In this document: one piece after another, positions 1,791 through 35,242 of the stretch
How positions within the stretch are numbered: position 1 is the stretch's first letter
How the letters are laid out: each line of letters opens with the position of its first letter
Assembly (NCBI RefSeq): GCF_000150275.1
Contig: NW_002061013.1
Span: 1-35,242 of the forward strand
From: Trichoplax adhaerens
Lineage: Eukaryota > Animalia > Placozoa
DNA: 35,242 nt
Direction: 5' to 3'
Position numbers and translations under genes: made by a program
The notes under the pieces: generated by a model
Databases searched by the model: none
The model's input: only the letters and a program-made list of their open reading frames with translations
Told to the model about the DNA's origin: nothing

Positions 1791-1874
1791 TTTATTGACA
1801 CTCTCGTTAAATTGCATTGGGTACAAGATACAAGATTAGCTTTACATTTCATGCAAATATTATTCCTTTTTTCA

Positions 1875-2090
1875 CGTGGGTTACTAACCAGTAACCCTCT
1901 CCACGCTTGATGATGAGTTGAGAGTGTTGAAGATTCCATTGAATGTCCTGTATGTAGAAGTGAGGGAATGGTAGAGTGATTTGTAGCTATAGTGTTTTGG
2001 GGTTATAAATATTCAAACTAGATAGATTTTCATACAGGATTAACTGCTTGTCCGACCATAAATTTTCATGGTCGAAGAATTGTGTTGCTA
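1875..2090 (-). pseudogene. Degenerate copy of the last propeller-gene exon (32780-33012)
   Basis: Shares ttgatgatgagttgagagtgttgaagattccattg and ttttcatacaggattaactgcttgtccgaccata with 32814-33010, with deletions. Confidence 0.85.
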
Positions 2091-2786
2091 AACTATGAAA
2101 CCGATAGTAAATCGTCTTGCTTTTTAGAAATTGAATGAGTGATCCAAGTTTTTTTGCTTACTATTTGTGGCGTTTTCCGCTAACTATCAGCATGCTTTTG
2201 CAAATATTTTTAATGAAGCTTTAACTTCATACCGTACTATTACACTTGAAGTATTTCCTTGTAACTATTAAGACATATGTCGTGCTTACATGCAATTTAA
2301 TTACATTATACGATAATAATGATTGAATCATCTTAAATAATAAAATGTAAATAAATAATAGATTATAGAGTCAAGTGGAATAGCGTTGTAGACGATTTGA
2401 TGAGAAAAACACCTGTTGTACTCTAATCACTTTCATGTCCGCTAAGGTAGGATAATTAATTATTACTAGTGTATCCAGGTATCATCCTAATTTATGCTCA
2501 ACTGCAGCAAATCGTCTATTGAAAAGGATTATAATTTTATTTTAAGCTTAGGCTAGCACATTGAACTAATACAGTAATATATTTTGACCTATATCATATA
2601 TCCTGTAAATATTTAAGGCTTGCAACAACAAAGCTAATTAATATCCACGTCAAATGCTAGATACTAATGTAAAGTATCAGACATTAAATGAGTCTACAAT
2701 TTCTACGTAATATACAAACGTTTAAGTAAACAATTAGACTTTTCGTCATCTCCATTAAAAGCATGCGACCGACCGATCTACTGTAG

Positions 2787-3013: not shown

Positions 3014-3063
3014 NNNNNNNNNNNNNNNNNNNNNNNNNNNNNNNNNNNNNNNNNNNNNNNNNN
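3014..3063. other. Assembly gap (50 N)
   Basis: Run of N. Confidence 1.
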
Positions 3064-5844: not shown

Positions 5845-8800
5845 CTTGATCGTTATTAGTGCTTAATGCTTTCTGACTTTTGATACCTGTAAGATTATTT
5901 TCAATTCAAGCAGTAAGTATGGATATTTCTCTTTATTTGATTAATTTCATAATAAATACTAACTATCTTAGTGATCAGTTTTACTGCAGTGTAAATACTG
6001 GTCTTGATGATGCAACAACTCCAATATTAATTTAGTAAAGAATTCAATTAAAATTTTCTATTTTAAGTAGATTGTGGCGGTATTTACCAGTAGCTTTGGT
6101 TGCTTCATCCGGGTCGATGTTTATCTTTTCCGCAACTGCACGTAAATTAGCTTTATAGAGAGCTTCAATTAGCTTTAACTTGGTGAAACTTGAGCCTTTC
6201 GTATCATGTTGTTCATATAACATCTCCGCACATTGTTCATTGACATCATCAGCATTATTAGCCTTTATAGTTTTAATTTGGTTCCGATTAAAATGTAGCA
6301 CCCTTGCTAAGTTTCGCCATTTTGTGCCAATGTCATCGACAATAAGGTTAAAATACTGTTGTGCAGCTGTCGTTACGTAAAGAGAAACATAGATATTTTA
6401 TTATTTGTACTGTGATGTTGAAGACAGTGTTGATGGTTAGACATGAAAGACGATAATGAATAAGTGCTATATCGGTAACTGTAGTTGCAAATTACTAGCA
6501 AGTAGTGCTTACGCGAATCTGGATTAGTCACTTTTACACTTTCTGTCTCACCATTACCATTAGAAATTTGGAATGTTCTGATAACAATAATAGTAGTTTA
6601 ATTAACAGTCATGTAATAGTTAGATTTGCACAAAAAATGACGAAATTTGGCAAGACATTAATCTAAGATTAATTGAATGCCTGTATTAGTGTATTATTAA
6701 CTCTTGATTGTCAAGTGTATATTTCGTCGTAAAATACTACTGGTTTCACTTATATTCTGAACTGCGCCTCGAATTTACTAAATTCGGTTTAAAATTTTCA
6801 GAAATTAGCAAGAAGCTAAATTACTATGAAAATATCCTGATATCTGCATAACGATCACGCCCCAATGATGTTAAAATAGGGATAGACACAGCTAATTATG
6901 AACAAAGTTATCTAACTCGATTTTACTAGCTACGATAGCACTCCGAATCACTTACGAATGGTTTGGTTTTAAGTTACCGGAAAAAAAACTATTGCATTGC
7001 GATAATGTCTAGACAGCTGGATATTACCTACATAATTCGCTTTGTGGTAATGGTCAAGCTTAACTTTAGGTCTATATCGTGTCTAATTATTTAATGTGTG
7101 ATGTTATGTTGCATCGATACTCGGTGAGACATTAAGTAATGAGAAAGTGAAGAAGCAGTTTACCAGCTGCTAATTTACGGTAATTTGACTGAAATTCTCA
7201 TAGCTTAGATGGTTAATATAATATAATACGGAAATTAACGAAAATATATGGTGGTTGCTAGCAAGAAACTTGTAATGTACAGTAGATACTCCTTTTTTAA
7301 GTCTACTATCATAATTTCATTTTTGTTGTAGGAGAATAACGAATCATGCGAATGTTATAGAATACACGTAGAAATTGCGCAGTAACCATAAGATAATTAT
7401 AACATAACCTGGAAATAGCCGATATCAGTACTTATCTTATCTAAAATCTGATATATATTTGCATAGATAACCGAACGTTTTGATAATGTTATCGAAGTAG
7501 GGCTCATCGATATTTATGTACATTAACTATGTGATTTGAATGATGCCATTTCAATAAATTTGAGAATCTTCAGTTTAGCCTTACAAGTCTACCTGACTAC
7601 TCAACTGATCTAGTAAGCAGTCCAGTTCAAGCTACTGTCGATAATCGTAATTTATTGTTGTTGATCTATTTACGGGTAATTTAATTTAAGTTGGTGATTT
7701 CTATAAAGATTGAACACCTAATTCTTGGTAAGTTGGCATATTGACTGCAGACAAACTGATATAGATGCTAAGTAATGGAGTCTTTTAAGCCATTTCATAA
7801 CAAGTTATCGAGTACAAAATAGAAATTGACGATGAACGCTTCTTAAGAATGTATACTTACGGTATATCGATTGGAGGTGGCGAATTTTGATTTGAGATGG
7901 ATTTGTTCTTTGGTTTTGAAGATATTTCCGGTTGTTGCTCTACCAGTGGTTCAATGCTAAATATTAGTAATGTAACATTTAAAATTCCGTAAAAGGTCTA
8001 TAATTTTAGTATCAAGTTTATCTGATTTGCTTCAGTGTTACTTATGATAGAATCTGTAGTAGAATTTTAGCTGGCAGTTTGATAGCAAACTAGTGTACTA
8101 TGTTCTAATCGTCTTTTAACATACGATACATAATTTAAATACTTTACAACAAACTATAGGAATTTCAAATATTTCGCCAATACGGTCATCTTTACAAATG
8201 TTTTTGTAAAAGACTTGTACAGCAGAAGTAATATAGTACATTACTAAACGATATAAACCTGCTATATCGCAATAGCTTGGAAAATATTTACTGCTTGAAA
8301 ACTAAAGATCGATGCATGTTCTAACGATTTTTTTATTATTGCTACAAATCGATATTCGTCAAAGAAGAAATAAAATGCTTTTAGCAACTTAACATTAAAG
8401 CCTACTAATAGATCTGTCCTCCCAACATCCCACACAGTACAATTCTAAATATTAACAACCTTGCCATCGTCAGGAGGTTGTCATAAACTGCATGTCTCTT
8501 CTAGATAAACTGAGCCTCCTGATAAATTCATAACAGCTATAAGTTTATTATTACGTTACAATTATATTAGTGTTGAAATTTCTATGATTAAAAAGGCTCA
8601 TGGTCATTTAAATATCACTACAGCATAATAGAACATTAGTACGGTACATAGATTATAATGTTATACAAAATTATTGATATGCCAAATAGGTTCATATCTT
8701 AAAAAGTTGTGTTGTTACTACTTGAGTATGTACTGTAATAAGGGTACTTAAAGCTTTTTAAAGGCAACACTTGATAATACATAATTTAAGGTCTAAAGTG

Positions 8801-9617
8801 CAAATATTGCGATTAATGGCACAGGAAAGTGTTTGAAACATATTACAATTAGCTTTTGATTATAATTGCCTAGCCAGTCGATAAGCGAAATGATAGCAAA
8901 AATATAAAAATAAAACTAGCAACCTTTAGTTCCAACTATATCTCAAAGTAGAGGTGCGACCGAGCATGAATGAGAACGATGACCAGTAATATTTTAATTC
9001 ATTAAAAGTCCTTTCCCTGCATATTTGTAATCCGATGTCATGTATGCTATCATTGCGTTCAATAGTCTGAACAGTGTCTGATTTTAAATTTAAGCATCGA
9101 TGATTATTTATAGTACTGGTAAATTGGTAAAATAAATAATTAATAATAATCAATTAACAGCATCCTTGACATTATAATAACAGTACAAGTTATTTAAATC
9201 TAATAAATACAAAGATTGCACTGAGTTTATGAGTTAACATTCATTTCCCAAAAGAGAATATTTTGGAGCACCCGTTATTTATAAAAGTCGAGAAAGCTAT
9301 TTACCTTTATTTTCTGCAGTTTTATTAGCCTCTTTTTCTAATCGTTCACCAAGTTCCCGAACACTACTAATATCGCTCTCTTGTAGCAAGTGACAAAATT
9401 GATAAAAGTTATCATCGCTTCTTGATTCCAGTACTTTTAGAAATTCAAAGGCTCGTTCTTTGTCAGTTTTACAGTCATCTCTCAGTTTTTTGACTTCTTC
9501 ATTAGATAAAATTTGTCGAAAACGTAGATCATATAGTATATCTACCAAAGGGACACTTGTGCTTATTTCTGAACAGTATTGGTCAATGATTCCTTTAATA
9601 GCTCGGGTTACAACCAT
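5845..9617 (-). CDS. CARD-linker-death domain adaptor (RAIDD/CRADD-like architecture), copy A. Exons 9305-9617 (CARD), 7861-7956, 6513-6577, 6088-6366 (DD), 5845-5886; last exon unresolved
   Basis: CARD: MVVTRAIKGIIDQY...ILSNEEVKKL...KERAFEFLKVLESRSDDNFYQFCHLLQES. DD: YFNLIVDDIGTKWRNLARVL...EQCAEML...KLIEALYKANLRAVAEKI. Exons from 7956 to 5845 join in frame. The CARD exon ends in phase 1 and exon 7956 starts in phase 2, so the exact isoform is uncertain. Confidence 0.7.
6088..6366 (-). CDS. Death-domain exon, copy A (93 codons, phase 1-1)
   Basis: Acceptor acgacag|CT, donor CTG|gtaaat. FADD/RAIDD-like DD motif I.D.IG..W..LAR.L and L.EAL....LR.VAE.I. Confidence 0.9.
9305..9617 (-). CDS. CARD exon, copy A (intact)
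   Basis: ATG at 9617, open for 104 codons + 1 nt, donor AAAG|gtaaat. Upstream acceptor ttcatatag|GAG near 9637. Six-helix CARD pattern. Confidence 0.88.
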
Positions 9618-10307
9618 TTTATACGTAGCTGTTACTCCTATATGAAAATATACAAGATCCAATTTAAGATAAATTGGGAGCAATACATACGGTATACATG
9701 TATACCGGATATAAATTAAAATTAGCTATGAAAACGAAGTACTTTAAAAGGATAAGTTTAGTTTCAGTCAGCTATTTCGCCTACATTCCTTTACAGCATT
9801 ATGCTGATTCTTTTAGACTAAGTTAATTGCTATCTCATCGCTTACGGTATAAATTATCTTGCGAATTATTAGAGTTATGATAGTATTGTAGTACGAGATA
9901 AATGTTAATTACGTATTCAACAATTCAATTGATTTCATCAAATGAATGAAGTTGATACTTGCTATATTATTAGGAATATAAGTGAAATTTTTGGTAGATT
10001 AATTGATAAGATTTTTTATAGCACAATGGAGAAACAATGAAAATGATCTTTTTACATTTACTTCAAGGACGATTTTTCAGTTGAAAAATGAAATAGTATT
10101 GTAATATTTCAGTTCTATTCAGTTTTACTGGTAGCCATTGAATGTTAATAACATAAATTCTGTACTAGCGAAGACTGAAGTCAGCAATCAAAAGAATCGC
10201 CATTTTGTACTTTATGAACTAATAATGCATACTAGAGTAACGTGATGTATAATTATAATGGATGCTAGCAATTCTTACAGGTGCATTAAAATATTTAATT
10301 TGTAACC

Positions 10308-13057: not shown

Positions 13058-13513
13058 CTACATTGTAATTAATCATATAAGGATTTATTTCTTCTGTTAT
13101 CCCATTTATTTTGTAAAGAGGTAATGCAAGTGAATGGGAATAGCCTTCAACTTCATAAAGAGGCACTGATCATATTTAATACGAAAAAAATGATTAACTA
13201 CATAAACCCCAGAATGATTCTTTGTAAACCGAAAAAATTAAATTCTGTGTAAGCTATTTAAGACTAAAGAGATAAATGATCAGGAAGAAAAAGATTATTA
13301 TCGTTTTGTTTTAAGACGATGAGCTTGCAATCTAATTTATTACGCTAACACATTAGCTCCAATTTTTGATGTCATCACGCTTCCGTCAAGCAAATTTTTG
13401 GCATAAAAATAAGCAGAATACTGTTCCGTCTAGGATAAATAATTTGCGACGATTTTAGATACGTAGTAAAGAAATCGTGATGTTTAAGATGATAAGTTTA
13501 CAATCTAATCTGT

Positions 13514-15329: not shown

Positions 15330-15749
15330 ACTATCATTTAACTGATCGCAGGTAACATTTTTGCAAGTCTAGATAAACTGCACTCGCCTACGACGGTAAT
15401 GCAGCAGCTGTGTTGTCAATTCTGCCAAACCCTTCGTTGGCTATCTCATATTTCATAAGTCCATGGAGTACTTTCATATAGTTCCATTTTGATATAGGTA
15501 TTTTTGCGACAGCATAGCTTGTACCGCATGAGCAGTTGTATACATATTCTCGAATTGATAAGTTGTTTTGGATTGCTTTAAGAGTAAAGCTTGGAAGCCT
15601 TTAGATATAGCACTATTACTACTGTTATCGGCACAATTTAGGGCTAAAATTGTCATCGCTGTTGTATCTAAATCAACCCAAGTTCCATCTGATGATTGCA
15701 TTACTTGTAATTTATAGACTAGATTCGATTTATATTTGCTGTTTGTCAA
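15330..15749 (-). pseudogene. Cobalamin-binding protein (transcobalamin/haptocorrin/intrinsic factor family) pseudogene fragment, alpha domain
   Basis: VDLDTTAMTILALNC and FENMYTTAHAVQAM resemble the family motifs (SVDT.AMA.LAL.C; FGN.YST.LA.QAL). After a frameshift near 15488 the reading continues WNYMKVLHGLMKYEIANEGFGRIDNTAAALPS*ASAVYLDL, with a TAG at 15388-15390, matching W.C...EI..G.F...AA.LP.L....YLD. Confidence 0.75.
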
Positions 15750-21127: not shown

Positions 21128-22425
21128 TTATTTATCTCGATTCAATATGGTTTCCGCGACCGAACGAAGACCACAAGCAAAGAGAGCCTCTACTAGTGCC
21201 AACTTTGTAAATGTTTTACCCTTTAACTTACAATGTGAATCGAGCATGTCTACACATTGCTGATCAGTATCATTACTGTTGTTTTGAGAAATTTTCTTAA
21301 TGGCAGAGTTGGTGAAATCCAACTCCCTTGCTAATTTTTTCCAGTCAGGGCCTACTTTCTTAGAAATGATATTGATATAGGAGCTTGCAGCTACAAATTT
21401 ACGGGTATTAACAATTCATTAAATTTCAATTTACTCTTACATTAAGCTATCCGTAAAGCATTTGTAAATTCATTTAATGCATACTACTAAGCACGATACA
21501 GTGATAGAGTTTAAAAAAATAAATAGCAGCAGGGTGACAAATTACATTTGGGATTAAGCTCAATAATGTAAGTAGAGTAAAAATGGATAATGTTAAATTA
21601 GTACGGTCATAAACTTACGCGAATCCGGGCTGACGATGTAAATATCTATTTTTTGACCTTCGATATCGTCGATTTGTCTAAGAAGTGCATTATTTCTACC
21701 ATTTGCGTCTGTATTTTCTACTATCGCAGTCACAAGGATAAATATAAATGTTTAATAAGAGCAAACATAGCATTAAAGAAATTATCTAATGGCATGTCTT
21801 AAAGTAAGTTCATTAATTGGGCGGTACAAAGGCACATTGAATACATACGAAAGAAAACTAAAATCATTTCTGAGCTAATATAGCCCGATTTTATCGGGGT
21901 TGGTACTGTAGAGCTGTTTTATTTCAAAAGCATAAAGCATATGTACTCTTTTGGCTTAAATAATTCTAATATAGTGTGATTTAGATCGCGATTTTCGCGA
22001 TCTATTAGACCTATTATAATAAATCTAATAACGCCCTTCAACCCCAAAAGTAAATAATTAATTATAATTATTAACCTTTCTTCAATAAACAAAGATTTCT
22101 ACAGTTACAATTAATATCCTGTAACTGAGATACTAAGAAATTATTTTTGCTGAAATTATCAATAGATTAATGAAATGGAGTAGAGTGATTCATGAAGTGA
22201 AAATGAAAGAATTAGTTTCAGATGTTTATTGTCATATATTCGTTGTTTTGAAAGGCGCGAAGCATAAATTTATCATCACTTTACTATTCTGTTATTTACT
22301 GAGAAAATACATGAGTTATAATTTACCTGGAGCCGTTTCTGTATCCATCTTGTCAACTTCGTCTTTCGCAGGGCTAAGTTGTTGTTGACTCGATTTGGTC
22401 TCTGGCTTAGGTTTGACGATACTGT
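21128..22425 (-). CDS. Death-domain adaptor copy B, 3' exons 22327-22425, 21619-21708 (or 21720), 21128-21390 (terminal DD exon). The CARD exon is either hidden in the gap or is the pseudogenised one at 25072
   Basis: Phase-1 junctions give DSIVKPKPETK...APDANGR...VSPDSPASSYINIISKKVGPDWKKLARELDF...LVEALFACGLRSVAETILNRDK*. The exon before the DD ends CCGGATTCGC|gtaag, versus CCAGATTCGC|gtaag in copy A. Confidence 0.8.
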
Positions 22426-23381: not shown

Positions 23382-23431
23382 NNNNNNNNNNNNNNNNNNN
23401 NNNNNNNNNNNNNNNNNNNNNNNNNNNNNNN
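23382..23431. other. Assembly gap (50 N) inside the CARD-DD array
   Basis: Run of N flanked by repeated sequence. Confidence 1.
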
Positions 23432-26400: not shown

Positions 26401-27692
26401 ATCTGCAATATGATGTACTTTATTTTCGTCAAAATCAGTTATTACTTGCATCGCACGCCAGTTAATACTTAGTTGCATCAAGCCTTAGTATCCTAACTTT
26501 GCAGAAATTTAGAGTTTCTACGTAAATTAGTAATACCTTTGTTTAACTTTTTATAAGATATCAACTGTAGTAAGGTAATTAAATAGTAGTAAAATCATAA
26601 ATTACTGCAATTATTATTTATGTATCCGTTAGTGAAACAAATTATATGCTTAAATACAAGAATCCGCTAACTTTAAATCGATAGTAAGTATACTCATATG
26701 CTTTCTCTAGCCGAAACACTAGTAACGAGCCGACTTTTCAGGTCAAATAATCTACCATAAATAAGAGCGATTTGTGAGCCATTTAAAATCCGCAATCACT
26801 ATAATTGTTTCATGCCTGACCCACAATACCGAAAACTAAATGGATTATGATAGTTTGGTTTCGAGATAGTCATTACAAGAGTATACTGTGCGTTACATTA
26901 TTGCAGTAGTAAAATATACTAAAATATGTACTTAGAACTGAAAATGATCGCAGTCATCTCTCAAGTTTAACCATTTTTTCCTACAAGTAAATCTCGTAAT
27001 AGACTATAAAACTGTCAGCGATTTGAGAAAAAAGTGATTTACGAAGATCTACAGTATAATCTTGTTGACTAAATAACCAATTTTTATCATATACGTACAT
27101 GGATCGTATCATATCCTAAACGATCCATCCAACCTAATTTGAGTGATTTCTCATTGGTGAAATGATACGCTACAATATATTTTTATTGACTTTTAAACAT
27201 AATTAACTCCTACATTGTAATTAATCATATAAGGATTTATTTCTTCTGTTATCCCATTTATTTTGTAAAAGAGGTAATGTAAGTGAATGGGAATAGCTTT
27301 CAGCTTCATAAAGAGACACTGATCATATTTAATACAAAAAAAATGATTAACTACATAAACCCCAGAATGATTCTTTATAAACCGAAAATATTCAATTCTC
27401 TGTAAGTTATTTAAGACTAAAGAGATAAAAGATCAGGAAGAAAAAGATTATTATCGTTTTGTTTTAAGACGATGAGCTTGCAATCTAATTTATTACGCTA
27501 AGAAATTAGCTCCAATTTTTGATGTTATCACGCTTCCTTCAAGTACACTTTTGGCATATAAATAAGTACAGTAGAACACTGTTCCGTCTAGGATAAATAA
27601 TTTGCGACGATTTTTGATACGTAGTAAAGAAATCGTTATGTTTAAGATGATAAGTTTACAATCTAATCTGTCATAAATAAGATCGATTTGTG
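23432..27692 (+). repeat. Segmental duplication copy 2, lacking the TE insertions of copy 1
   Basis: Colinear with 7529-13534 apart from indels and the TE insertions. Confidence 0.92.
25072..25384 (-). pseudogene. Pseudogenised CARD exon (paralog of 9305-9617)
   Basis: Colinear with copy A but has GGA>TGA (25358-25360) and CGA>TGA (25220-25222). The upstream acceptor AG is mutated to AT near 25405, and the acceptor of the downstream linker exon (near 23863) is mutated AG>AA. Confidence 0.9.
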
Positions 27693-28733
27693 AAATTACT
27701 GTAGGTATACAGTATAAGCCTACCCAAGGAAATAAGTTACCGTTAAGAACATGAAATTCAGACGTTGCCGTAGCCTATTTTAAAATTCCAAGCTCTAACC
27801 TAATTATTATTTGCATACATATTACAATGAGGGGCGTAATATTGCACTCTTGACTAATCAAAGTTTGTATAAAGGTATTAATCCGACAACATAAGCAGGC
27901 AATCAGTACTGATTTAACGCAGTAATTATTTACTCATTTTTAAATATGTGAAGCACTTTCTAGTTATGGCTACAAAAGGGATAATTATTGTAGATGTTTT
28001 AGCCAACCTGACTTTGATCAATACACATTTGCCATAAAGTTAATTTAGAATAAAAATATGGAAAAACTAATAGCCGAGATCGTAACTCTTAACGTGACGC
28101 TTTGTGATATCTGATAACTTCACACTCTCAATAAATCTACAATTCATAAAGTGATTTCGATGGAAAGATATCAATGCATCCAAAACACTAAAATGTATCT
28201 GTCATGCAAGTTAAATGACCATAGCTAATTCCTTTCGTAAGCGTATACAGCTAAAAATACTTTGTCGTTTCATTGTAAAATCGTGCTCAGTAACTGGATT
28301 AGCACTGAACAGGTTACTAAATAATTAATCGGCTTAAGCACGGGTATAATTTCTTAAGCAGCTTATAAAACTATCCTTATTGATAAAATACTTAACATAT
28401 TGACCACAAACATTCAAATATCAAAATCTAGATAATTCATCTTGCGGCTGCAACAATGTACGTGAATTAAACCTTAGATGTCCTAGACTATTCTCGGACT
28501 ACTTTTATCTGTTGCACATACCTGGATTGTTTGTCCCTTTACTACAACTTTTTGAAGTAAACGCTTTACGCTGTGTATAATAATTATAAATAGATTAGAA
28601 ATTGAATAAAGTTACTTTCGATGATGATTTTTTGAAATTTTACATGCAATCTCGGATCAATGACTCACGATCGCTATAACATTAAGTCAAGAAATTTTAT
28701 AATTCTTTTAATGATTAGACATGCTTTGTTAAT

Positions 28734-30232
28734 TTAGGTGCCTACATGTAACTCTTCTATATATCCATCTATATATCCAGAAATTATAACATTGCTCTCG
28801 TTGCCTGAAGTCTCTCTATTCATTTCAAATTTACAAATTTCAACGCGACCTTTATCTTTGGAGGTATTTGGGAGTTTAGGATATATAATTCTATTTCCAT
28901 AGTTATAATAGTTATCGTTCCTATCGCTATCGTTCCAATTAATTGTAATCTCCAAGCCACCTATTTTCTGATATTTTGCATCATCACTTGAAGATAAGTA
29001 TCGAAGAATATATTTGCCATTTTTTAATAAAGGTTTTGCATTTCCATCAATTGTAAGATCTAGTTCGACCATTTTTTCTGAAAGTTCATACTCAGCTTTA
29101 CTGTTGCATGATTTTATTACCAAGTTTATATGTAATTTATCCGGTTGTACAGGCAACGCATAGGCGAGCATTTCAACACGCTTCTGAATTATTGTAGGCC
29201 GCTGGGTCTTGATATCGCCAGCCTTAGTATTTTTCTCAAAGTTAGATTGTGTTGAAGAGCTGGCTTCTGATCTTCGTACAAAGCCAGGATCTGCTTTATT
29301 ATTTTTTTCACTTTCTTTGTTGTTACTGGCATCGATTAATGACGTTTCTACATAGGAGTTATTATCAAGTTGAAGTAGATTCTCTTCCTCCTTAATTTTT
29401 TTCTTAGTTCCGGTAGAGCCTGAAGACTCGATATTTTTTTGACTTTGCAACTGTTCCGGTCTTGTTGTATGGTGCATCTCAGATTTTCGCTCAGTCTTAG
29501 TATATCGGCGATTGTCTTTACAGATAGCGTTATTATTAAGATTTAGGCTCTCATTTTGCAAACAAAATTTAAGACATCCATTTTCATCAAATTTTGTACC
29601 GTGATCTTGTTCGTAACATTGATTTGATGCCATCGATCGATCAGATTGTTCAGGAGCAATGCTATCGGCATTGGCATCTTCATACTCGCTGCTCTCATTA
29701 TCATCCTCCATAGTATCCGACTGATCATCTTCACACTTGCTGCTATTATTATTAGACTTCGTAGTCACATTTTTACAGATAACGCTATTTAATGAAAAAT
29801 GATTTAGGGTGTATCTAATGCATTTGTATTCGTCTTCAACGTTAATAAAAAAAGTACAATCTTCCTTTTTCCAAGACGAGTTAATATTATTTCTGTGTAA
29901 TAAAGATTTCTCACAATGTTCAAAGTCTATCCCTTGATTCTCAAGAGCTGATACCGCTTCTTGCAATATGGGTAGTATTAAGATCGGCTTTGCAGGGCCT
30001 TCAAATGTTAATCCATCAGGCTCAAGATTAACGATTGGTGTTAACATTATGAATTTCCTTGTTCCATCTGCATATGGTGGATCGTGGTAATGTACTGAAA
30101 CTTTGATTTTTTCATCTTCTGTTAAACTATCAGATGGAATTACAAGTTTGATACCAGGCACACTATCGATAATTATAATATTTTCCTGGTTTTTCAGGCA
30201 TATTTTACTTGCTTCTGGGTAATCGATGAGAA
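28734..30232 (-). CDS. Terminal exon: ZU5 domain with HFS motif (29793-29801), low-complexity S/N/E/D/K spacer, C-terminal beta-rich UPA-like domain
   Basis: Within the 512-aa ORF. GIKLVIPSDSL and LTPIVNLEPDGLTFEGPAKPILILP match the ZU5 consensus; YTLNHFSL matches the HFS motif at the end of autocleaving ZU5 domains. Polypyrimidine acceptor tttgtttctttag|TT at 30232. The UPA call rests only on position and beta-strand-like pattern. Confidence 0.82.
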
Positions 30233-32374
30233 CTAAAGAAACAAAGGTTATGATTGAAGTCTTTCTTGACATCCATCTTAATTTTAAAGAAGACTAATAC
30301 TAATATTATGTTAGTCATTCGACTCCTTAACGTCGATATCAATCAATATTACTTTTACGTACGTATAGTGGTTATAATACAATGACATCTACCATTTTCT
30401 AACCTGGTTCCTTATTAGAAGCAGCCCTCTGGATTTCTTTAATTAAATTTTTACCCATCTCTCGAGCCTTTGTCAATGATGACGTCTTAAGAAATCGGCA
30501 AAATCGATTTAAATCTAAGTTGATAACTGACTTTAGCAATAAAATAGCAATATCCATTCTTTCTTGAGGGTCAGAACAGTCTGACAAAATATCCTTTTCT
30601 GCAGTGGTTAGAAACTCGCTATCTTGCAAAAAGCTTGTAACTTGACTTTCTACAGAGGTAGCGTCAGCTTTGCGTAAAACTTTGTCAACGATATCCATGA
30701 GACATCCATTTCTTAGACCTCCTTTATGAAAATCTACAGGCATAATATGAAATACTGCGGTTAATAAAAACGATTGTGACCAGGCATGATTGAATTAGAG
30801 TTGTTGTACAACCGTCATTCCTTACCTTGTAAATTATATACATATACATTACCAGTGTTATAAATAAGAAATGAGTAATATATATAAATGTTAATTTATC
30901 TATTCAAATTTTATTTTACTTATAAAAACATATTATTTTTGACGTATTCATTTTCCTCTTAAAACTATTTTACTAGAAGTAAACATAAGAAATTGAAACT
31001 CTACTGAGCATCATTTTCAATTTTAATAATCTTTGCCAACTAATACAGAGTATCGAATATTACTAGAATTTTGCAATATTGAATTATCATGAGCTGTCAA
31101 TGTTTTAAATTTATTTTCGGTAAATTTGTTACAATTCATAATCGGTCCATAATTTTAGTATGTAAGCGACTAAGGAATAATTTGAAGAGCCTATTCCAAA
31201 AAAGGCAATGACTTATGTTTAAGAAAGAAAATTATTTCAAACTCCACAATGATCTAAAAGTGACGGGTACTTTGCATCTAAATTGTGTAACCTAATAGAT
31301 AAAATAATCCTAAATGGATCAATTGCACCAAGTAGAATTCAAAGCAATCATTAAAAAATAGGAAGACCTACGATATTTTATTAAATTGATTAATGTTTGC
31401 AAATTAAATTACATTATAGAATGTAGATTGTAGATAGATGAAAATAGTTGAAAGAATAACGAATGTTGATAAAACAGGGATTGATCGATGTGATAATAAC
31501 AAATTGATCCTTTAATTTATTTGTCGAGGGATATAAATTAAATTATTAAACTGCAGTGTTGTTAAAAAAAAGTAAAATAGAATGTAGAGCAATCAGACTA
31601 CTTACATCACTTTGCGATGAAAAATACGAGGACAGATGTCAATGATGTTATGAAGAAATAGCATAAAATAACATAAACTAGTAGTTGCCTTATCTTGCTC
31701 GTTCATAATCTCACAATAAAACATCATGAGAAAAAGTTGCAATATTATTAAGGACAACAAATCAGGTACCGTACCTATTTTTTCTACAATATCTTTTCTT
31801 TTTATGGCTCTTAATGCTCCTATTAATCGCTTTTTTGTTGCAACTTCACCGTTAACATTTGACCATCTCTCTAAAAATTCACTGGCCCGATCATAATTGC
31901 TCTTATATATATCTTGAATGTGGCTGACATCAATTGCTCCTGATTCATTTAATTTTGATGCTAAGTCAATCCAGTCCTTTTCCAGATTCGTTGCCACATC
32001 CAAAAAGTATTGAGAAATATCTAGATATTGCAAATTCCAGTATCATCATATCGATAAAATGTCAATGATTTGCATCTACACTGTTCCTCAAGTACGTTCT
32101 TTACGAGTAGCTATTATAAACCTCCTTTATTCCACTGGTTTTCCCTTTTTAATGTGCTATCCGGTCTATATTGAGTAACATCTAAATTGAATAAGTTTCA
32201 TAGTTTCATTTTAGCAAAAAATCAACGACTAGCATTTTCGCAGTTCTATAATACCCTGCTTTTGAGACTTGAGAGCAATTACTGAATACCTTTTCTTAGT
32301 TGGTTAGTTCGTTTTGATTCACTGCTGTATACATACTGAGTAGTATCTGGAGATGATAATTTCATTATCGTCAT
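28734..32374 (-). CDS. Spliced gene for a DD-CARD-ZU5-(disordered spacer)-UPA-like protein, ~746 aa. Exons 32290-32374 (or acceptor at 32346), 32122-32181, 31775-32020 (DD), 30404-30754 (CARD), 28734-30232 (ZU5 to C-terminus)
   Basis: All junctions have GT/AG on the minus strand and all are phase 1, giving one open frame of 2241 nt from ATG 32374 to the stop at 28734. The start codon and the joining of the DD exon to the CARD exon across the ~1 kb intron are inferred. Confidence 0.7.
30404..30754 (-). CDS. CARD-like exon (117 codons, phase 1-1)
   Basis: Helical death-fold-sized exon that aligns with the CARD at 9305-9617 (DCSDPQER vs DCKTDKER; FCRFLKTSSLTKAREMGKNL vs FCHLLQESDISSVRELGERL). 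Acceptor ccgcag|TA, donor CCAG|gttag. Confidence 0.75.
30762..30868 (-). repeat. Copy of a propeller-gene exon end plus its phase-1 intron (34375-34489), directly upstream of the CARD exon
   Basis: ttaataaaaacgattgtgacca...gcatgattgaattagagttgttgtacaacc...cttaccttgtaaattatat is present at both sites. Confidence 0.85.
31775..32020 (-). CDS. Death-domain exon (82 codons, phase 1-1)
   Basis: DISQYFLDVATNLEKDWIDLASKL...RASEFLERWSNVNGEVATKKRLIGALRAIKRKDIVEKI matches the DD pattern (W..LA..L; L..W....G..AT...L..AL..I.R.D). Acceptor tctag|AT at 32020, donor ATAG|gtacgg at 31775. Confidence 0.9.
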
Positions 32375-32777
32375 ATTTGCATAAAATCAACCACTATCAT
32401 CAACAAATAATTAATGAATAGGTTTTTGCTAGAATTTTTAAAGCAAAACCTTCATATCTCCAACTTACGCTGTTTTATTCAATGTCGACTGTATTGCAAG
32501 TAAATACGAAATAATAATCAAATTATGCAATTCATTTGCTCAGTTTGTCGACTCACTGAGTGAAATCTTGTCTAAAGTAGCCAAACGATTACTAATAATG
32601 AAACAGTGATCTTACTAATAACGAAACAGTGACCATTTGAGCTGGATCTCAATCTACCTTATTTAGTCTATACGATATATTAGTAAAGAAGTAATTACCC
32701 TTTGCATTTCTGATTTGAGCTAATAAAGTAACAATATGCAATTTTTTCAAATCGTAAATGATTTATAAGATAATTAC

Positions 32778-35242
32778 CTGGGGTTACTACTAAGCAGTAA
32801 TCCTTATCACCCTTGATGATGAGTTGAGAGTGTTGAAGATTCCATTGCATGTCCTCTATCAAGAAGTGATCTTGTGGTTGAAATGGTAGAGTGATTTGTA
32901 GCTCTAGTGTTTGGGGGTTATAAATATTCAAACTATAATTATTGAAACTATTTTCATACAGGATTAACTGCTTGTCCGACCATAGATTTTCATGGTCGAA
33001 GAATTGTGTTGCGAAATTATCGAAGTATTTGATATTGTCTTTGTATCTTTTCATGTATAAATTTCCATCTTGGTTGAGTATCTATAGGCATTGAATTTTA
33101 TGATTAGCACAACCTACGTTCAACAATGACGACGTCACATTGATTGTATGCAGTTATCGTTGTCTTACTGCTATATGGTCTCCATTTTCCAGTAGTAGCA
33201 AAAGATCGTCAACATCGTCCTATAATGAATTTAATGGAACATAAGGATCAATTATGGACTAGAGTCGAACTCCTTACATAATCAACTCATTACAGTTGTT
33301 GTCATCCTCCTTCCAACTCATTTCCATATTGACCGTATCACTGCGATCATTATGACTTACCACTGCTAATACATTAGCAATCATTTCGGCATCTTTCTCT
33401 TCCCATACATCAACTAATTTTTCTTTCTTCATCCGAAGAGGCGAATGTTTAATCTTATTAGGGTTATAATTAATCATTATTTTACAGATTAATCCTTCCT
33501 TCTCTTGGCACTTAATATTTTGCAGTAATTGCGTACGATGTTCACCATCCCCAAACTTGTAACACTACAATAAATTTAAGTCGGAAATGTCGTTATTGGT
33601 CGCCTCCATTTGCAATAGACGTCAAAGTCGACATTCAAGGCTATTTTCGACATGAAACTGAACAGTCAATTTATAGACGGTTCGAGTTAAGAATGGAGAT
33701 TACATGAAAATAAATTATTCAAGCTTACTCTCAAGCATTCATCATATCCCCAAGCATAAAGATATCCATCATCAACATACACAGCATCATGACTCCATGT
33801 CAGTCGATCAACGCTCTTCATTCCGGTTGTAAGGTTAATAGTTATTATCCAGCTATTGAATGAGGAGAATGTCTGAAATAAATCAAGTAATTAATTCGAC
33901 CAATTGACCTCCAACGTAATTGTAAAATCAGTTCAACAACTTCTTATGCTAGCTAATAAGCATTCTCATTTTCATCATCTTCTTCTAAATAATACTACCG
34001 TCATTTTCATACAAACTTCAAACTAGTATTTTCAACATACGTTCATGAGAATGAGTGTGTTATCCTTCTTTCTATATCTGAAGAGAATCAAATCTTTAGC
34101 AGCCGATTCTTCTTCAAGTATTCCATTGATTAATTCCCTGTACTTTCTACAATCTTCTATACCTACAAACTCGATCAGCTGCAACCAATCAATATTATTC
34201 AATTCAATTCAATTGAGCAGAGGATTGAACAAAGTCGATAGAGCTACTAGTGCTGATGAAAGCTTAACCTACGTCGAATATGTTGACGGTAGTTTGGGGG
34301 TTACGTTGGGGTCTACCAACATCAACTGATTTTGTTTGAGAGATATCTTGCCAAGCAATTTTATCGCCTTAGTTTAATAAAAACGATTGTGACCATGAAT
34401 GAATGCATGATTGAATTAGAGTTGTTGTACAACCATCATGTCTTACCTTGTAAATTATATTCATATACATCCCGTTCATCATAAATAAGCAATCGATGAC
34501 TACCAGGAATAAACATTGATCGACCAGATTGATCAAGTTCAACACCAGATTGGACTTGACCACCACTCATCTTGAGTATGACTTCCTACATACAGTATAC
34601 CACAGTATTACAATATAGGACTAATATTACTGCACAATAAAATATTATGCTGATCTACTTTATGACGCATTATCAATATGAGTAACCCAATATTGCACTA
34701 ACCCTAGTTATACATTCAATAGCGATCATTGACTGATCGCCTGATACCAAAATATTCTCAACGAATCCAATATCATGTAATATAATTCGAAATTGATTTT
34801 CGAATTCGAAATTCAATGACGAGACGAATTCTTGTTCCATTTTTAACTGACCAATTGTACTACTAATATGTCTGGTATATGACAATATCATATAGGCTGC
34901 ATCACGGTAGATGTTGATGTACCTTAAGGGCTTGCTATGTTGAAAATCATTGGTAGCAAAGTACCGATCATCATCCTTTGCATGGATGAAAGCAGGTACT
35001 TTGAATGATCGACAAGTCCATTGCTGTGCATTCCACATCTATCCATCAAATTGATACAAATAGCTTTTATCAATTGGATCTAAGAGACGATATTTGACTT
35101 GACTGCATTTAGTCAATTGTAGCTTACTTCAATTTGACATTCATTAATCCAATTTTGCGGATCGACAGGTTCATAGTCTTTAGACTTCCCTCCTTGACTT
35201 CGATATTTTCTCCACCACAACAAGACACAAACACTATCTGCA
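32778..35242 (-). CDS. 3' portion of a multi-exon divergent WD40/beta-propeller-like gene, 5' end outside the window. Exons 35128-35242, 34703-35038, 34447-34585, 34273-34367, 34041-34178, 33729-33872, 33361-33564, 33169-33219, 32778-33081
   Basis: Nine exons with canonical splice sites join in consistent phase with no stops (~500 aa). Blade-like motifs include CQIEMWNAQQWTC, RLLIYDERDVYEYNLQG, LNIYNPQTLEL and IEDMQWNLQHSQLII. It may be the C-terminal sensor of an APAF1/NACHT-WD40-type protein, but no NTPase is visible here. Without further splicing the last exon reads through to a stop at 32695. Confidence 0.7.

What the first reader, a model, noticed from the sequence alone, without database searches (positions are those of the whole stretch)
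28734..32374. 'Inverted' PIDD/FIIND-like protein: N-terminal DD + CARD followed by an HFS-bearing ZU5 and a UPA-like domain
Seen: in-phase exons for a DD, a CARD and a ZU5 ending in NHFSL (HFS at 29793-29801), then a beta-rich C-terminal domain with no death fold after it. Established: PIDD1 autocleaves at HF|S, and NLRP1/CARD8 autocleave at F|S within FIIND (ZU5+UPA). In these proteins, and in UNC5 and ankyrins, the signalling DD/CARD lies C-terminal to UPA. Inference: the topology is reversed here and two different death folds are in tandem. Self-cleavage would give a DD-CARD-ZU5 fragment, effectively a built-in RAIDD-like adaptor, held by a C-terminal fragment. I do not know this architecture from characterised proteins.
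Basis: partly seen in the sequence, partly recalled or inferred. Interest (0 to 1): 0.85.

Follow-up and report, generated by a model that had tools for sequence, protein, structure and literature searches.

The report
Placozoan Apaf-like DD-CARD-ZU5-UPA-DD gene
This Trichoplax gene does join a death domain, a CARD and a probably self-cleaving ZU5-UPA module in one transcript, but it is not an 'inverted' PIDD: it starts further upstream in an Apaf-1-like sensor region and most likely ends in a second, ordinary C-terminal death domain.

Summary
The window is a 35-kb Trichoplax adhaerens scaffold. The DD matches Pfam at 9e-11. The next exon folds as a CARD (CED-4 CARD, Z 10.8). The ZU5 matches ankyrin ZU5 (Z 14.1), with HFS at 29801-29793 before its last strand. 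The C-terminal domain is UPA-like. RNA contigs from three studies join the DD, CARD and ZU5 exons.

The proposed topology does not hold. Upstream, the transcript is spliced from the C-terminal repeat region of an Apaf-1-like NB-ARC family with at least 44 copies, and the gene runs off the scaffold end. Downstream, the ZU5-UPA exon is spliced 12 nt before the supposed stop. It joins a 49-nt exon and then an exon at 22425. Two further in-phase exons follow, ending in a second death domain (Pfam 6e-14, stop at 21128).

The likely architecture is Apaf-1-like region, DD, CARD, ZU5(HFS), 187-aa disordered linker, UPA, linker, DD. This is a canonical ZU5-UPA-DD module with extra death folds in front. 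It belongs to a placozoan ZU5-UPA family that is shuffled with TPR, CARD and DD domains. Self-cleavage is predicted but untested. No public model holds the full gene. Moderately interesting: a new variant of a known kind.

The parts
35125..35238 (-). Upstream coding exon of the Apaf-1-like part. The gene is cut by the scaffold end at 35242.
   Evidence: tblastn matches residues 539-575 of the NB-ARC proteins P0034 and P0031 at 68-74% identity. The frame is open up to the scaffold end.
32778..35038 (-). Several exons encoding about 465 aa. They are homologous to the C-terminal repeat region of the Trichoplax Apaf-1-like NB-ARC family, which has at least 44 genomic copies.
   Evidence: The H2 model P0002 maps here. 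Identity is 73-82% to the C-terminal ~465 aa of paralogs carrying NB-ARC, APAF-1 WHD and APAF1_C. Summed depth is raised in both DNA and RNA runs. The paralogs end CLVTHVKKT*. This copy instead has the donor CCAG|GTAAT at 32778.
32290..32346 (-). Small linker exon 2a (DTTQYVYSSESKRTNQLRK), phase 1-1.
   Evidence: RNA joint 32181|32290 appears in 3 studies. The end of an X4 contig reads TAGTAACC+CCAGATACT, which is exactly the expected splice product with the upstream exon.
32122..32181 (-). Small linker exon 2b (DVTQYRPDSTLKRENQWNKG). It looks like a duplicate of exon 2a.
   Evidence: RNA joints 32020|32122 and 32181|32290 appear in X1, X4 and X7. It is present in the H2 model P0002.
31775..32020 (-). 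Death domain 1 (DD1)
   Evidence: Pfam PF00531 at 8.9e-11. Matches FADD DD chains at 2.6e-6. RNA joints are seen on both sides.
30404..30733 (-). CARD (divergent, Apaf-1/CED-4 type)
   Evidence: No Pfam hit of its own. It shares 31-32% identity with Trichoplax CARDs, one of which lies next to a P-loop NB-ARC exon. Profile against PDB finds CARD8 at 0.011. The AF2 model has pLDDT 87. The CED-4 CARD matches at Z 10.8 and the Apaf-1 CARD at Z 9.2.
29757..30232 (-). ZU5 domain, ending in the strand that follows HFS
   Evidence: Pfam ZU5 at 4e-4, 21 bits, equal to the cut-off. The family profile's best PDB hits are ankyrin ZU5-ZU5-UPA entries. AF2 pLDDT is above 90. VIA-align 2 gives Z 14.1, rmsd 2.6 against 3f59. 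Foldseek gives 7.8e-9 against AnkB.
29793..29801 (-). His-Phe-Ser motif, the predicted autoproteolysis site (cut between F and S)
   Evidence: The motif sits in the turn between model strands 249-255 and 261-267. HFS is the best-conserved C-terminal motif of the family: 13 of 22 aligned members have it, and others have HYS, HFC or HFT.
29196..29756 (-). Disordered linker of about 187 aa, rich in S, N, E, K and D. It is inserted between the post-cleavage strand and UPA.
   Evidence: pLDDT is 25-45. Paralogs have only about 20 aa here. The likely orthologue P0004 also has a long acidic stretch at this point.
28746..29195 (-). UPA-like beta-sandwich domain.
   Evidence: pLDDT is 75-89. Two-domain matches: AnkB ZU5C+UPA Z 14.4, UNC5b Z 10.3, rat NLRP1 FIIND Z 8.9, and the NLRP1 UPA chain Z 8.4. 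The same domain sits between ZU5 and DD in paralogs P0009 and P0014. RNA joint 28570|28746 appears in 3 studies.
28522..28570 (-). Linker exon A (RKAFTSKSCSKGTNNP)
   Evidence: RNA joint to 28746. A loose end at 28522 continues into 22425. The frame is open.
22327..22425 (-). Linker exon B
   Evidence: The 30-nt loose end of an X1 RNA contig matches 22425-22396 exactly, directly after an AG. The frame is open and the donor is CAG|GTAAAT.
21619..21720 (-). Linker exon C (inferred)
   Evidence: AG and GT sites, phase 1-1, open frame. No RNA junction was checked.
21128..21390 (-). Death domain 2 (DD2) and the stop codon. This is the inferred last exon.
   Evidence: Pfam PF00531 at 5.7e-14, covering profile positions 3-83 of 86. 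It hits FADD, ankyrin, RIPK1, CRADD and PIDD DDs in PDB. It is in phase with exon C and has an open frame to the stop.

Best explanation
This is one expressed Trichoplax gene. It is cut at its 5' end by the scaffold boundary and is not fully represented in any public model. It encodes a multi-death-fold signalling scaffold of the PIDD1/NLRP1 kind.

The order of parts is: the repeat region of an Apaf-1-like STAND protein (the NB-ARC part is presumably off the scaffold), DD1, CARD, ZU5 with an intact HFS, a 187-aa disordered linker, UPA, an 85-aa linker, and DD2.

Shown:
- the domains and their order;
- the splice junctions from the Apaf-like exon through to exon B;
- expression in RNA data.

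Inferred:
1. The ZU5 cuts itself between Phe and Ser, as in PIDD1, Nup98, NLRP1 and CARD8.
2. The C-terminal fragment (strand, linker, UPA, DD2: a PIDD-CC analogue) stays bound, because its first strand completes the ZU5 sandwich.
3. Activation of the Apaf-like part, or loss of the N-terminal fragment, exposes the death folds. These then nucleate an oligomer that recruits CARD- or DD-bearing caspases or adaptors.

The DD1-CARD pair in cis would act like a built-in RAIDD-type adaptor.
For: Organism and public models.

Gene structure:
- RNA joints appear in three independent studies.
- The junction of exon A with exon B is supported.
- The contig end for the junction of the Apaf-like exon with exon 2a is the exact expected product.
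- Exons A to D are open and in phase.
- The independent H2 assembly shows the same adjacency.

Domains:
- DD1.
- CARD.
- ZU5 and UPA.
- DD2.
- Apaf-like region.

Family context: paralogs show ZU5-UPA-DD, DD-ZU5-UPA and TPR-ZU5-UPA, with HFS conserved.

Fragment retention: the split-chain prediction scored 0.70 against a best control of 0.00. In calibration this mark was reached by 51 of 78 solved complexes and 2 of 108 mismatched pairs. The runs agree in at least 41% of contacts and the partner's pLDDT is about 30. The interface uses only residues 260-269, inserted into the ZU5 sheet. The cleavage chemistry of HFS and SFS motifs at this position is described in PMC3210808.
Against: - No cleavage has been observed.
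- Ankyrin and UNC5 ZU5 domains do not cut themselves, and several paralogs have lost the nucleophile (HFA, HCG).
- The junctions from exon B to C and from C to D were not checked with RNA.
- An assembly gap (23382-23431) lies inside the long intron between exons A and B.
- The Apaf-like junction rests on 8-12 nt of one contig plus the H2 model.
- Unspliced contigs across 32321-32807 also exist.
- The NB-ARC part is not on the scaffold.
- Pfam does not recognise the CARD or the UPA, and ZU5 is only at the cut-off.
- The complex test may pass from memory of solved ZU5/FIIND folds, and the UPA was not placed with confidence.
Confidence: 0.58

Rival explanations
1. The architecture is the same, but the ZU5-UPA-DD part does not cleave. 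It would be a structural or autoinhibitory supramodule, as in ankyrins and UNC5b. ZU5 would clamp UPA and DD2, and HFS would be kept only for packing of the buried Phe.
For: The best structural matches are ankyrin and UNC5b, which do not self-cleave. Several family members lack the nucleophile yet keep the fold. Earlier scan notes describe non-cleaving members.
Against: The exact HFS tripeptide of PIDD1 and Nup98 sits at the canonical turn before the last strand. It is the most conserved motif at the C-terminal end of the ZU5 across the family.
Confidence: 0.2
2. The first reader's short 'inverted' protein is a real isoform. A transcript would start inside intron 32777-32347, use ATG 32374, and retain the intron after 28746 (ending VGT*). 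The product would be DD-CARD-ZU5-UPA with no C-terminal death fold.
For: Unspliced contigs cover 32321-32807 in X1, X4 and X7, at a higher depth than other introns. A contig also runs unspliced through 28450-28551. ATG 32374 is in frame. The H2 model ends at VGT*.
Against: The spliced forms have about 3-5 times the depth of the unspliced contigs at both places. The H2 contig is too short to contain exons B to D (10,754 nt), so its VGT* end is probably an artefact of truncation. Contigs cannot show transcript starts.
Confidence: 0.12
3. The gene is a recent chimeric fusion with no function of its own. A copy of an Apaf-like gene tail would have gained a splice donor and now reads into a neighbouring ZU5-UPA-DD family gene, on a repeat-rich unplaced scaffold.
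For: The Apaf-like part has at least 44 copies, many on small scaffolds. Similarity to the paralogs stops exactly at the new donor. Earlier notes report decayed chimeric members of this family.
Against: All exons are open over about 1,400 codons. The gene is expressed in three studies. The same arrangement is found in Trichoplax sp. H2. Relatives at 41% identity from unnamed sources keep CARD, ZU5 and UPA with the same motifs.
Confidence: 0.1

Closest known systems
PIDD1 (LRR-ZU5-ZU5-UPA-DD; PIDDosome with RAIDD and caspase-2)
   Same: It has a ZU5 with an HFS motif at the end of the domain, followed by UPA and then a C-terminal DD. The predicted C-terminal fragment, UPA-DD, corresponds to PIDD-CC. 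A repeat-type sensor region lies N-terminal to the module.
   Different: There are no LRRs, and one ZU5 rather than two. A DD and a CARD are built in upstream of ZU5 (RAIDD-like parts in cis, in the order DD-CARD rather than CARD-DD). A 187-aa disordered insert separates the cleavage strand from UPA. The N-terminal region is Apaf-1-like.
NLRP1 and CARD8 (FIIND = ZU5-UPA, then CARD)
   Same: The logic is a STAND-type sensor, then a repeat region, then a self-cleaving ZU5-UPA, then a C-terminal death fold. The first strand of the C-terminal fragment completes the ZU5 fold. The model matches the rat NLRP1 FIIND at Z 8.9 and its UPA chain at Z 8.4.
   Different: The NB-ARC (Apaf-1 clade) is presumed but not seen. 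There is no NACHT and no LRR. The C-terminal death fold is a DD rather than a CARD. The motif is HFS rather than SFS. Pfam FIIND does not hit. Extra DD-CARD lies N-terminal to ZU5.
Ankyrin and UNC5 ZU5-UPA-DD supramodules
   Same: These are the best structural matches for both ZU5 and ZU5+UPA, with the same domain order ending in a DD.
   Different: Those ZU5 domains lack the HFS nucleophile motif and do not self-cleave. They have no CARD and no STAND-like region.
Placozoan ZU5-UPA family (TRIADDRAFT_54879, _62789, _52779, _54880 and relatives)
   Same: It is a homologous ZU5-UPA module (26-41% identity) with the same motifs, usually encoded in a single exon and followed by linker exons and a DD. 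The family is shuffled with DD, CARD-like and TPR parts.
   Different: This member is the only one seen here that combines an Apaf-1-like region, DD and CARD in front, and the only one with the long disordered insert. The partial relative P0004 also has such an insert.
Apaf-1 / CED-4
   Same: The upstream ~500 aa are 73-82% identical to the C-terminal region of Trichoplax NB-ARC/APAF-1-WHD/APAF1_C proteins. The CARD is closest in structure to the CED-4 and Apaf-1 CARDs.
   Different: The CARD lies after the repeat region rather than at the N-terminus. The paralogs stop at ...CLVTHVKKT*. The NB-ARC of this copy is not on the scaffold.

Membership tests
Death domain (PF00531) | Profile match above the gathering score over the whole six-helix domain | tested here: met
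   DD1 scores 42.2 bits (cut-off 22.6). DD2 scores 52.5 bits over profile positions 3-83 of 86.
CARD (PF00619) | Sequence profile match | tested here: not met
   The exon has no Pfam hit even at E below 1. A paralogous exon at 32% identity scores 23.2 bits against a cut-off of 23.9.
CARD (PF00619) | Six-helix death fold closest to solved CARDs | tested here: met
   The AF2 model has pLDDT 87. The top 16 VIA-align 2 rows are all CARDs, at Z 8.3-10.8. DD and PYD entries reach 7.4-7.5, and entries outside the death fold at most 4.7. The top 8 Foldseek rows are CARDs, but with E of 0.4-1.2.
ZU5 (PF00791) | Profile match at or above the gathering score | tested here: inconclusive
   The exon ORF scores 21.0 bits against a cut-off of 21. 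P0001 scores 20.5 and P0002 scores 19.4.
ZU5 (PF00791) | ZU5 beta-sandwich fold | tested here: met
   VIA-align 2 gives Z 14.1, rmsd 2.6 over 127 aa against ankyrin ZU5. Foldseek gives 7.8e-9.
Self-cleaving ZU5 / FIIND type (PIDD1, NLRP1, CARD8) | [HS]-F-S motif in the turn before the last ZU5 strand | tested here: met
   HFS is at model residues 258-260, between strands 249-255 and 261-267. The rat NLRP1 UPA chain aligns from residue 264.
Self-cleaving ZU5 / FIIND type (PIDD1, NLRP1, CARD8) | Autoproteolysis that depends on the motif's Ser, with the fragments staying associated | not testable with these tools
   Only a split-chain prediction was possible. It scored 0.70 against a best control of 0.00, with the interface formed by residues 260-269.
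UPA domain | Beta-sandwich directly after ZU5 and before a death fold, structurally like the UPA of UNC5, PIDD and ankyrin | tested here: met
   ZU5+UPA matches AnkB (Z 14.4), UNC5b (Z 10.3) and the NLRP1 FIIND (Z 8.9). The UPA chain alone matches at Z 8.4, against 6-7 for generic C2 and Ig sandwiches. The domain sits between ZU5 and DD in paralogs. There is no Pfam UPA or FIIND hit. Here a 187-aa insert separates it from ZU5.
PIDD1 orthologue | N-terminal LRRs and two tandem ZU5 domains | tested here: not met
   Pfam and the fold search find no LRR and only one ZU5.
NLR / Apaf-1-like STAND protein | NB-ARC or NACHT NTPase domain | tested here: inconclusive
   Only the post-NTPase region is on the scaffold. 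The gene runs off the scaffold at 35242. Close paralogs (73-82% identity) carry NB-ARC.

The most novel reading that the evidence does not exclude
Placozoa independently assembled an NLRP1-like sensor. A complete Apaf-1-type STAND ATPase would be fused through its repeat region to DD-CARD and a self-cleaving ZU5-UPA-DD. It would be activated by 'functional degradation' or release of the non-covalently held UPA-DD fragment. If so, the FIIND principle would be an ancient and recurrent solution in animal innate immunity and cell death.
Probability: 0.2. Interest if true: 0.85.

Novelty: new variant of a known kind. Interest (0 to 1): 0.55.

Why it matters
ZU5-UPA modules that cut themselves are the trigger of the vertebrate PIDDosome and of the NLRP1 and CARD8 inflammasomes. 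How and when this principle arose is unclear.

This gene shows that one of the simplest animals has an expressed protein that puts an HFS-bearing ZU5-UPA-DD module behind an Apaf-1-like sensor region and a DD-CARD pair. That combination is not known from any studied protein. It gives a direct test case for whether self-cleavage and fragment release predate bilaterians: wild type against a Ser-to-Ala mutant.

It also shows that both public gene models of this locus are truncated or mis-joined. Domain censuses of placozoan death-fold and NLR repertoires therefore miss it.

Tried and rejected
- Pfam on the CARD exon and on its relatives P0010, P0017 and P0020 gave nothing.
- PDB sequence searches with the ZU5-UPA exon and with the CARD exon alone found nothing meaningful. 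Alignment profiles were needed.
- The protein-atlas search of the Apaf-like region was uninformative.
- A word-index search with the DD2 exon found no protein of 47-150 aa. A longer annotated protein is therefore not excluded.
The contigs of the likely orthologues P0003, P0004 and P0010 could not be inspected.
- The first genome search used a wrong frame and was corrected.
- The search of earlier findings near the locus and with all words together was blank.
- The JGI 3' exons (27319-27224) are not used by the RNA contig seen, which goes to 22425 instead.
- The H2 'VGT*' end is bypassed by splicing.
- Read laying allowed a single call, so junctions B-C and C-D, the first Apaf-like exons, and transcript starts remain untested.
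- I did not build or search a joined full-length protein. The exons were searched apart by reference, and only the public models P0001 and P0002 were folded or searched whole.
Full report
**Origin and public models.** The last large ORF of the finding is 100% identical to TRIADDRAFT_62478 of Trichoplax adhaerens (P0001, 657 aa, named 'ZU5 domain-containing protein' in UniRef). The contig length on record equals the window, so the window is a whole 35,242-bp scaffold. The same 90% cluster holds a 1,194-aa model from Trichoplax sp. H2 (P0002, RDD36166.1), on a contig of only 10,754 nt. The two models disagree at both ends. P0001 starts inside the CARD exon, lacks the DD, and adds two 3' exons. 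P0002 starts about 500 aa further upstream, includes the DD, and stops at the read-through VGT*.

**Checking the observation.**
- The DD exon (32020-31775, minus strand) matches Pfam Death at 8.9e-11 and FADD death domains in PDB at 2.6e-6.
- The following exon has no Pfam hit. It shares 31-32% identity with Trichoplax CARD exons. One of these lies directly upstream of a P-loop NB-ARC exon, and another scores 23.2 bits on Pfam CARD.
- The seven-sequence alignment of these CARD exons has no gaps in its core and ten invariant columns. Its profile finds the CARD8, ICEBERG and CED-3 CARDs first in PDB, though weakly (0.011-0.36).
- The AlphaFold model of the exon has pLDDT 87 and pTM 0.77. The top eight Foldseek rows are CARDs, although the E-values are not significant. 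By VIA-align 2 the top 16 rows are all CARDs: CED-4 at Z 10.8, rmsd 2.1 over 96 aa, and Apaf-1 at Z 9.2. DD and PYD entries reach 7.4-7.5. The first row outside the death fold has Z 4.7. I accept the exon as a divergent CARD.
- The ZU5 is exactly at Pfam's cut-off (21.0 bits). In a model built on 27 family sequences it has pLDDT above 90. It matches ankyrin ZU5 at Z 14.1, rmsd 2.6 over 127 aa, and AnkB by Foldseek at 7.8e-9.
It sits in the turn between the last two ZU5 strands. This is the position of the PIDD1/Nup98 HFS and the CARD8/NLRP1 SFS cleavage sites (PMC3210808).

**The C-terminal domain.** After HFS and one strand come 187 disordered residues rich in S, N, E, K and D. A beta domain follows with pLDDT 75-89. 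Three observations make it UPA-like.
1. ZU5 plus this domain aligns as a pair to AnkB ZU5C+UPA (Z 14.4), UNC5b ZU5+UPA (Z 10.3) and the rat NLRP1 FIIND (Z 8.9).
2. Alone, with the post-cleavage strand, it aligns to the NLRP1 UPA chain at Z 8.4. Generic C2 and Ig sandwiches reach only Z 6-7.
3. The homologous domain of paralogs sits about 20 residues after HFS and, in P0009 and P0014, directly before a death domain. That is the UPA position.

Pfam UPA and FIIND models do not hit any member.

**Transcript structure.** I laid contigs of four runs on 28450-34440. X2 behaves as DNA: it shows no joints and even depth. X1, X4 and X7 come from three studies and carry GT..AG joints on the minus strand.
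- They confirm 30404|30232 (CARD to ZU5) and 31775|30733 (DD to CARD).
- They show two small exons upstream of the DD (32346-32290 and 32181-32122), as in the H2 model.
The big exon is spliced 12 nt before the stop at 28734, into a 49-nt exon.
- A loose end at 28522 in X1 continues with 30 letters that occur once in the window, at 22425-22396, directly behind an AG.
- From there, two further exons with good splice sites (21720-21619 and 21390-21128) keep phase 1 and open frames.
- The last of these is a complete death domain, with Pfam 5.7e-14 over profile positions 3-83 of 86, followed by a stop.

Junctions B-C and C-D are inferred. A 50-N assembly gap lies in the long intron. Two things make DD2 the likely true end. 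The family's usual layout is a ZU5-UPA exon, then linker exons, then a DD. And the H2 contig is too short to hold these exons, which explains the truncated H2 model. I put this at about 0.85.

**The 5' side.** The first ~465 aa of P0002 are 73-82% identical to the C-terminal ~465 aa of Trichoplax proteins that carry NB-ARC, the APAF-1 winged helix and the APAF-1 helical domain. This family was reported as a placozoan Apaf-1 expansion (PMC6321704).
- One exon of this region has at least 44 copies in the genome.
- Summed depth over 32650-34440 is 20-50 times that of the single-copy part, in both DNA and RNA runs.
- The paralogs end ...CLVTHVKKT*. In this copy, similarity stops at that point and the sequence reads ...GTA ACC CCA G|GTAAT, which is a good donor.
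- The end of an X4 contig, TAGTAACC joined to CCAGATACT, is exactly the predicted splice product of this donor with the acceptor at 32347/32346.
- Upstream of the H2 model's 'start', a further exon (35238-35125) matches residues 539-575 of the paralogs and runs to the scaffold end.

So the gene is cut at its 5' end by the scaffold boundary. Whether an NB-ARC precedes is unknown. Unspliced contigs over 32321-32807 also exist at lower depth.

**Family context.** An exhaustive phmmer search of 1.8 billion representatives found only 26 relatives. All the named ones are Trichoplax. The genome holds at least 18 ZU5-UPA paralogs, typically as one ~330-aa exon. The module occurs with:
- a DD in front (P0007);
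- a DD behind (P0009, P0014);
- a CARD-like domain in front (P0005);
- TPRs in front (P0011, P0024).

More distant hits have LRRs in front, as PIDD does. HFS is kept in 13 of 22 aligned members. HYS, HFC and HFT occur, and a few members have lost the nucleophile.

Earlier notes of this scan describe the same shuffled placozoan family on other scaffolds, including a DD-ZU5-UPA-DD member. I used them as context only. Surveys of cnidarian and sponge NLRs list NACHT-ZU5 combinations without a known function (PMC8260672 and PMC12909245). A STAND-ZU5 fusion would therefore not be unprecedented as a domain pair.

**Mechanism.** I favour constitutive HF|S autoprocessing. This would give an N-terminal fragment (Apaf-like region, DD1, CARD, ZU5) and a C-terminal fragment (strand, linker, UPA, DD2).

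A split-chain prediction supports binding of the two fragments. It scored 0.70 against a best control of 0.00. In calibration this mark was reached by 51 of 78 solved complexes and 2 of 108 mismatched pairs. The runs agree in at least 41% of contacts, and the partner's pLDDT is about 30. The confident interface uses only residues 260-269, inserted between ZU5 strands 172-184 and 220-230. This is the strand complementation seen in FIIND and GAIN domains. The pass may reflect memory of those folds.

The rest is inference from PIDD1, NLRP1, CARD8 and UNC5b. A trigger acting on the Apaf-like part, or loss of the N-terminal fragment, would free or expose the death folds for oligomerisation and caspase recruitment.

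**Verdict.** The 'inverted topology', the 'N-terminal DD' and the 'no death fold after UPA' claims are not supported. The gene is best described as a canonical ZU5-UPA-DD module with DD-CARD and an Apaf-like region added in front, plus an unusual disordered insert after the cleavage strand.

Noticed in passing
window 9297-9683 (-), 6044-6301 (-), 1858-2103 (-): Further death-fold exons lie downstream on the same strand. One is a CARD exon (Pfam CARD 6.9e-5, with near-identical copies on two other scaffolds). Another is a partial DD exon (Pfam Death 2.3e-8). There is also a copy of the last Apaf-like exon with an internal TAG. They could be a RAIDD-like CARD...DD gene, or pieces of other family members.
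   Followed up: partly
window 32290-32346 and 32122-32181 (-): The two small linker exons before DD1 (DTTQYVYSSESKRTNQLRK and DVTQYRPDSTLKRENQWNKG) resemble each other. Both are phase 1-1, which suggests a tandem exon duplication.
   Followed up: no
window 23382-23431 and 3014-3063: There are two 50-N assembly gaps. The first lies inside the ~6.1-kb intron between linker exons A and B, so that intron's length and content are uncertain.
   Followed up: partly
window 27224-27319 (-) and 13072-13166 (-): The last exon of the JGI model P0001 has a second copy in the window at 76-100% identity. It is not the exon used by the RNA contig seen. It is probably a dispersed repeat that was mis-joined into the model.
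   Followed up: partly
window 32650-34440: Summed contig depth here is 20-50 times that of the neighbouring single-copy exons, in a DNA run as well as in RNA runs. Many variant joints are seen. This reflects the Apaf-1-like family of at least 44 copies, which has many expressed, closely similar members.
   Followed up: partly
window 15474-15749 (-): An ORF with a borderline match to the eukaryotic cobalamin-binding protein family (PF01122, 1.1e-5, 25.1 bits against a cut-off of 25). It is presumably an exon of an unrelated neighbouring gene.
   Followed up: no
P0003 and P0004 (unnamed ENA/Logan sources, 41% identical to the ZU5-UPA exon): The closest relatives outside T. adhaerens/H2 have HYS and HFC in place of HFS. 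P0004 shares a 4,185-nt contig with a CARD-like ORF (P0010) and also carries a long acidic stretch after the motif.
   Followed up: partly
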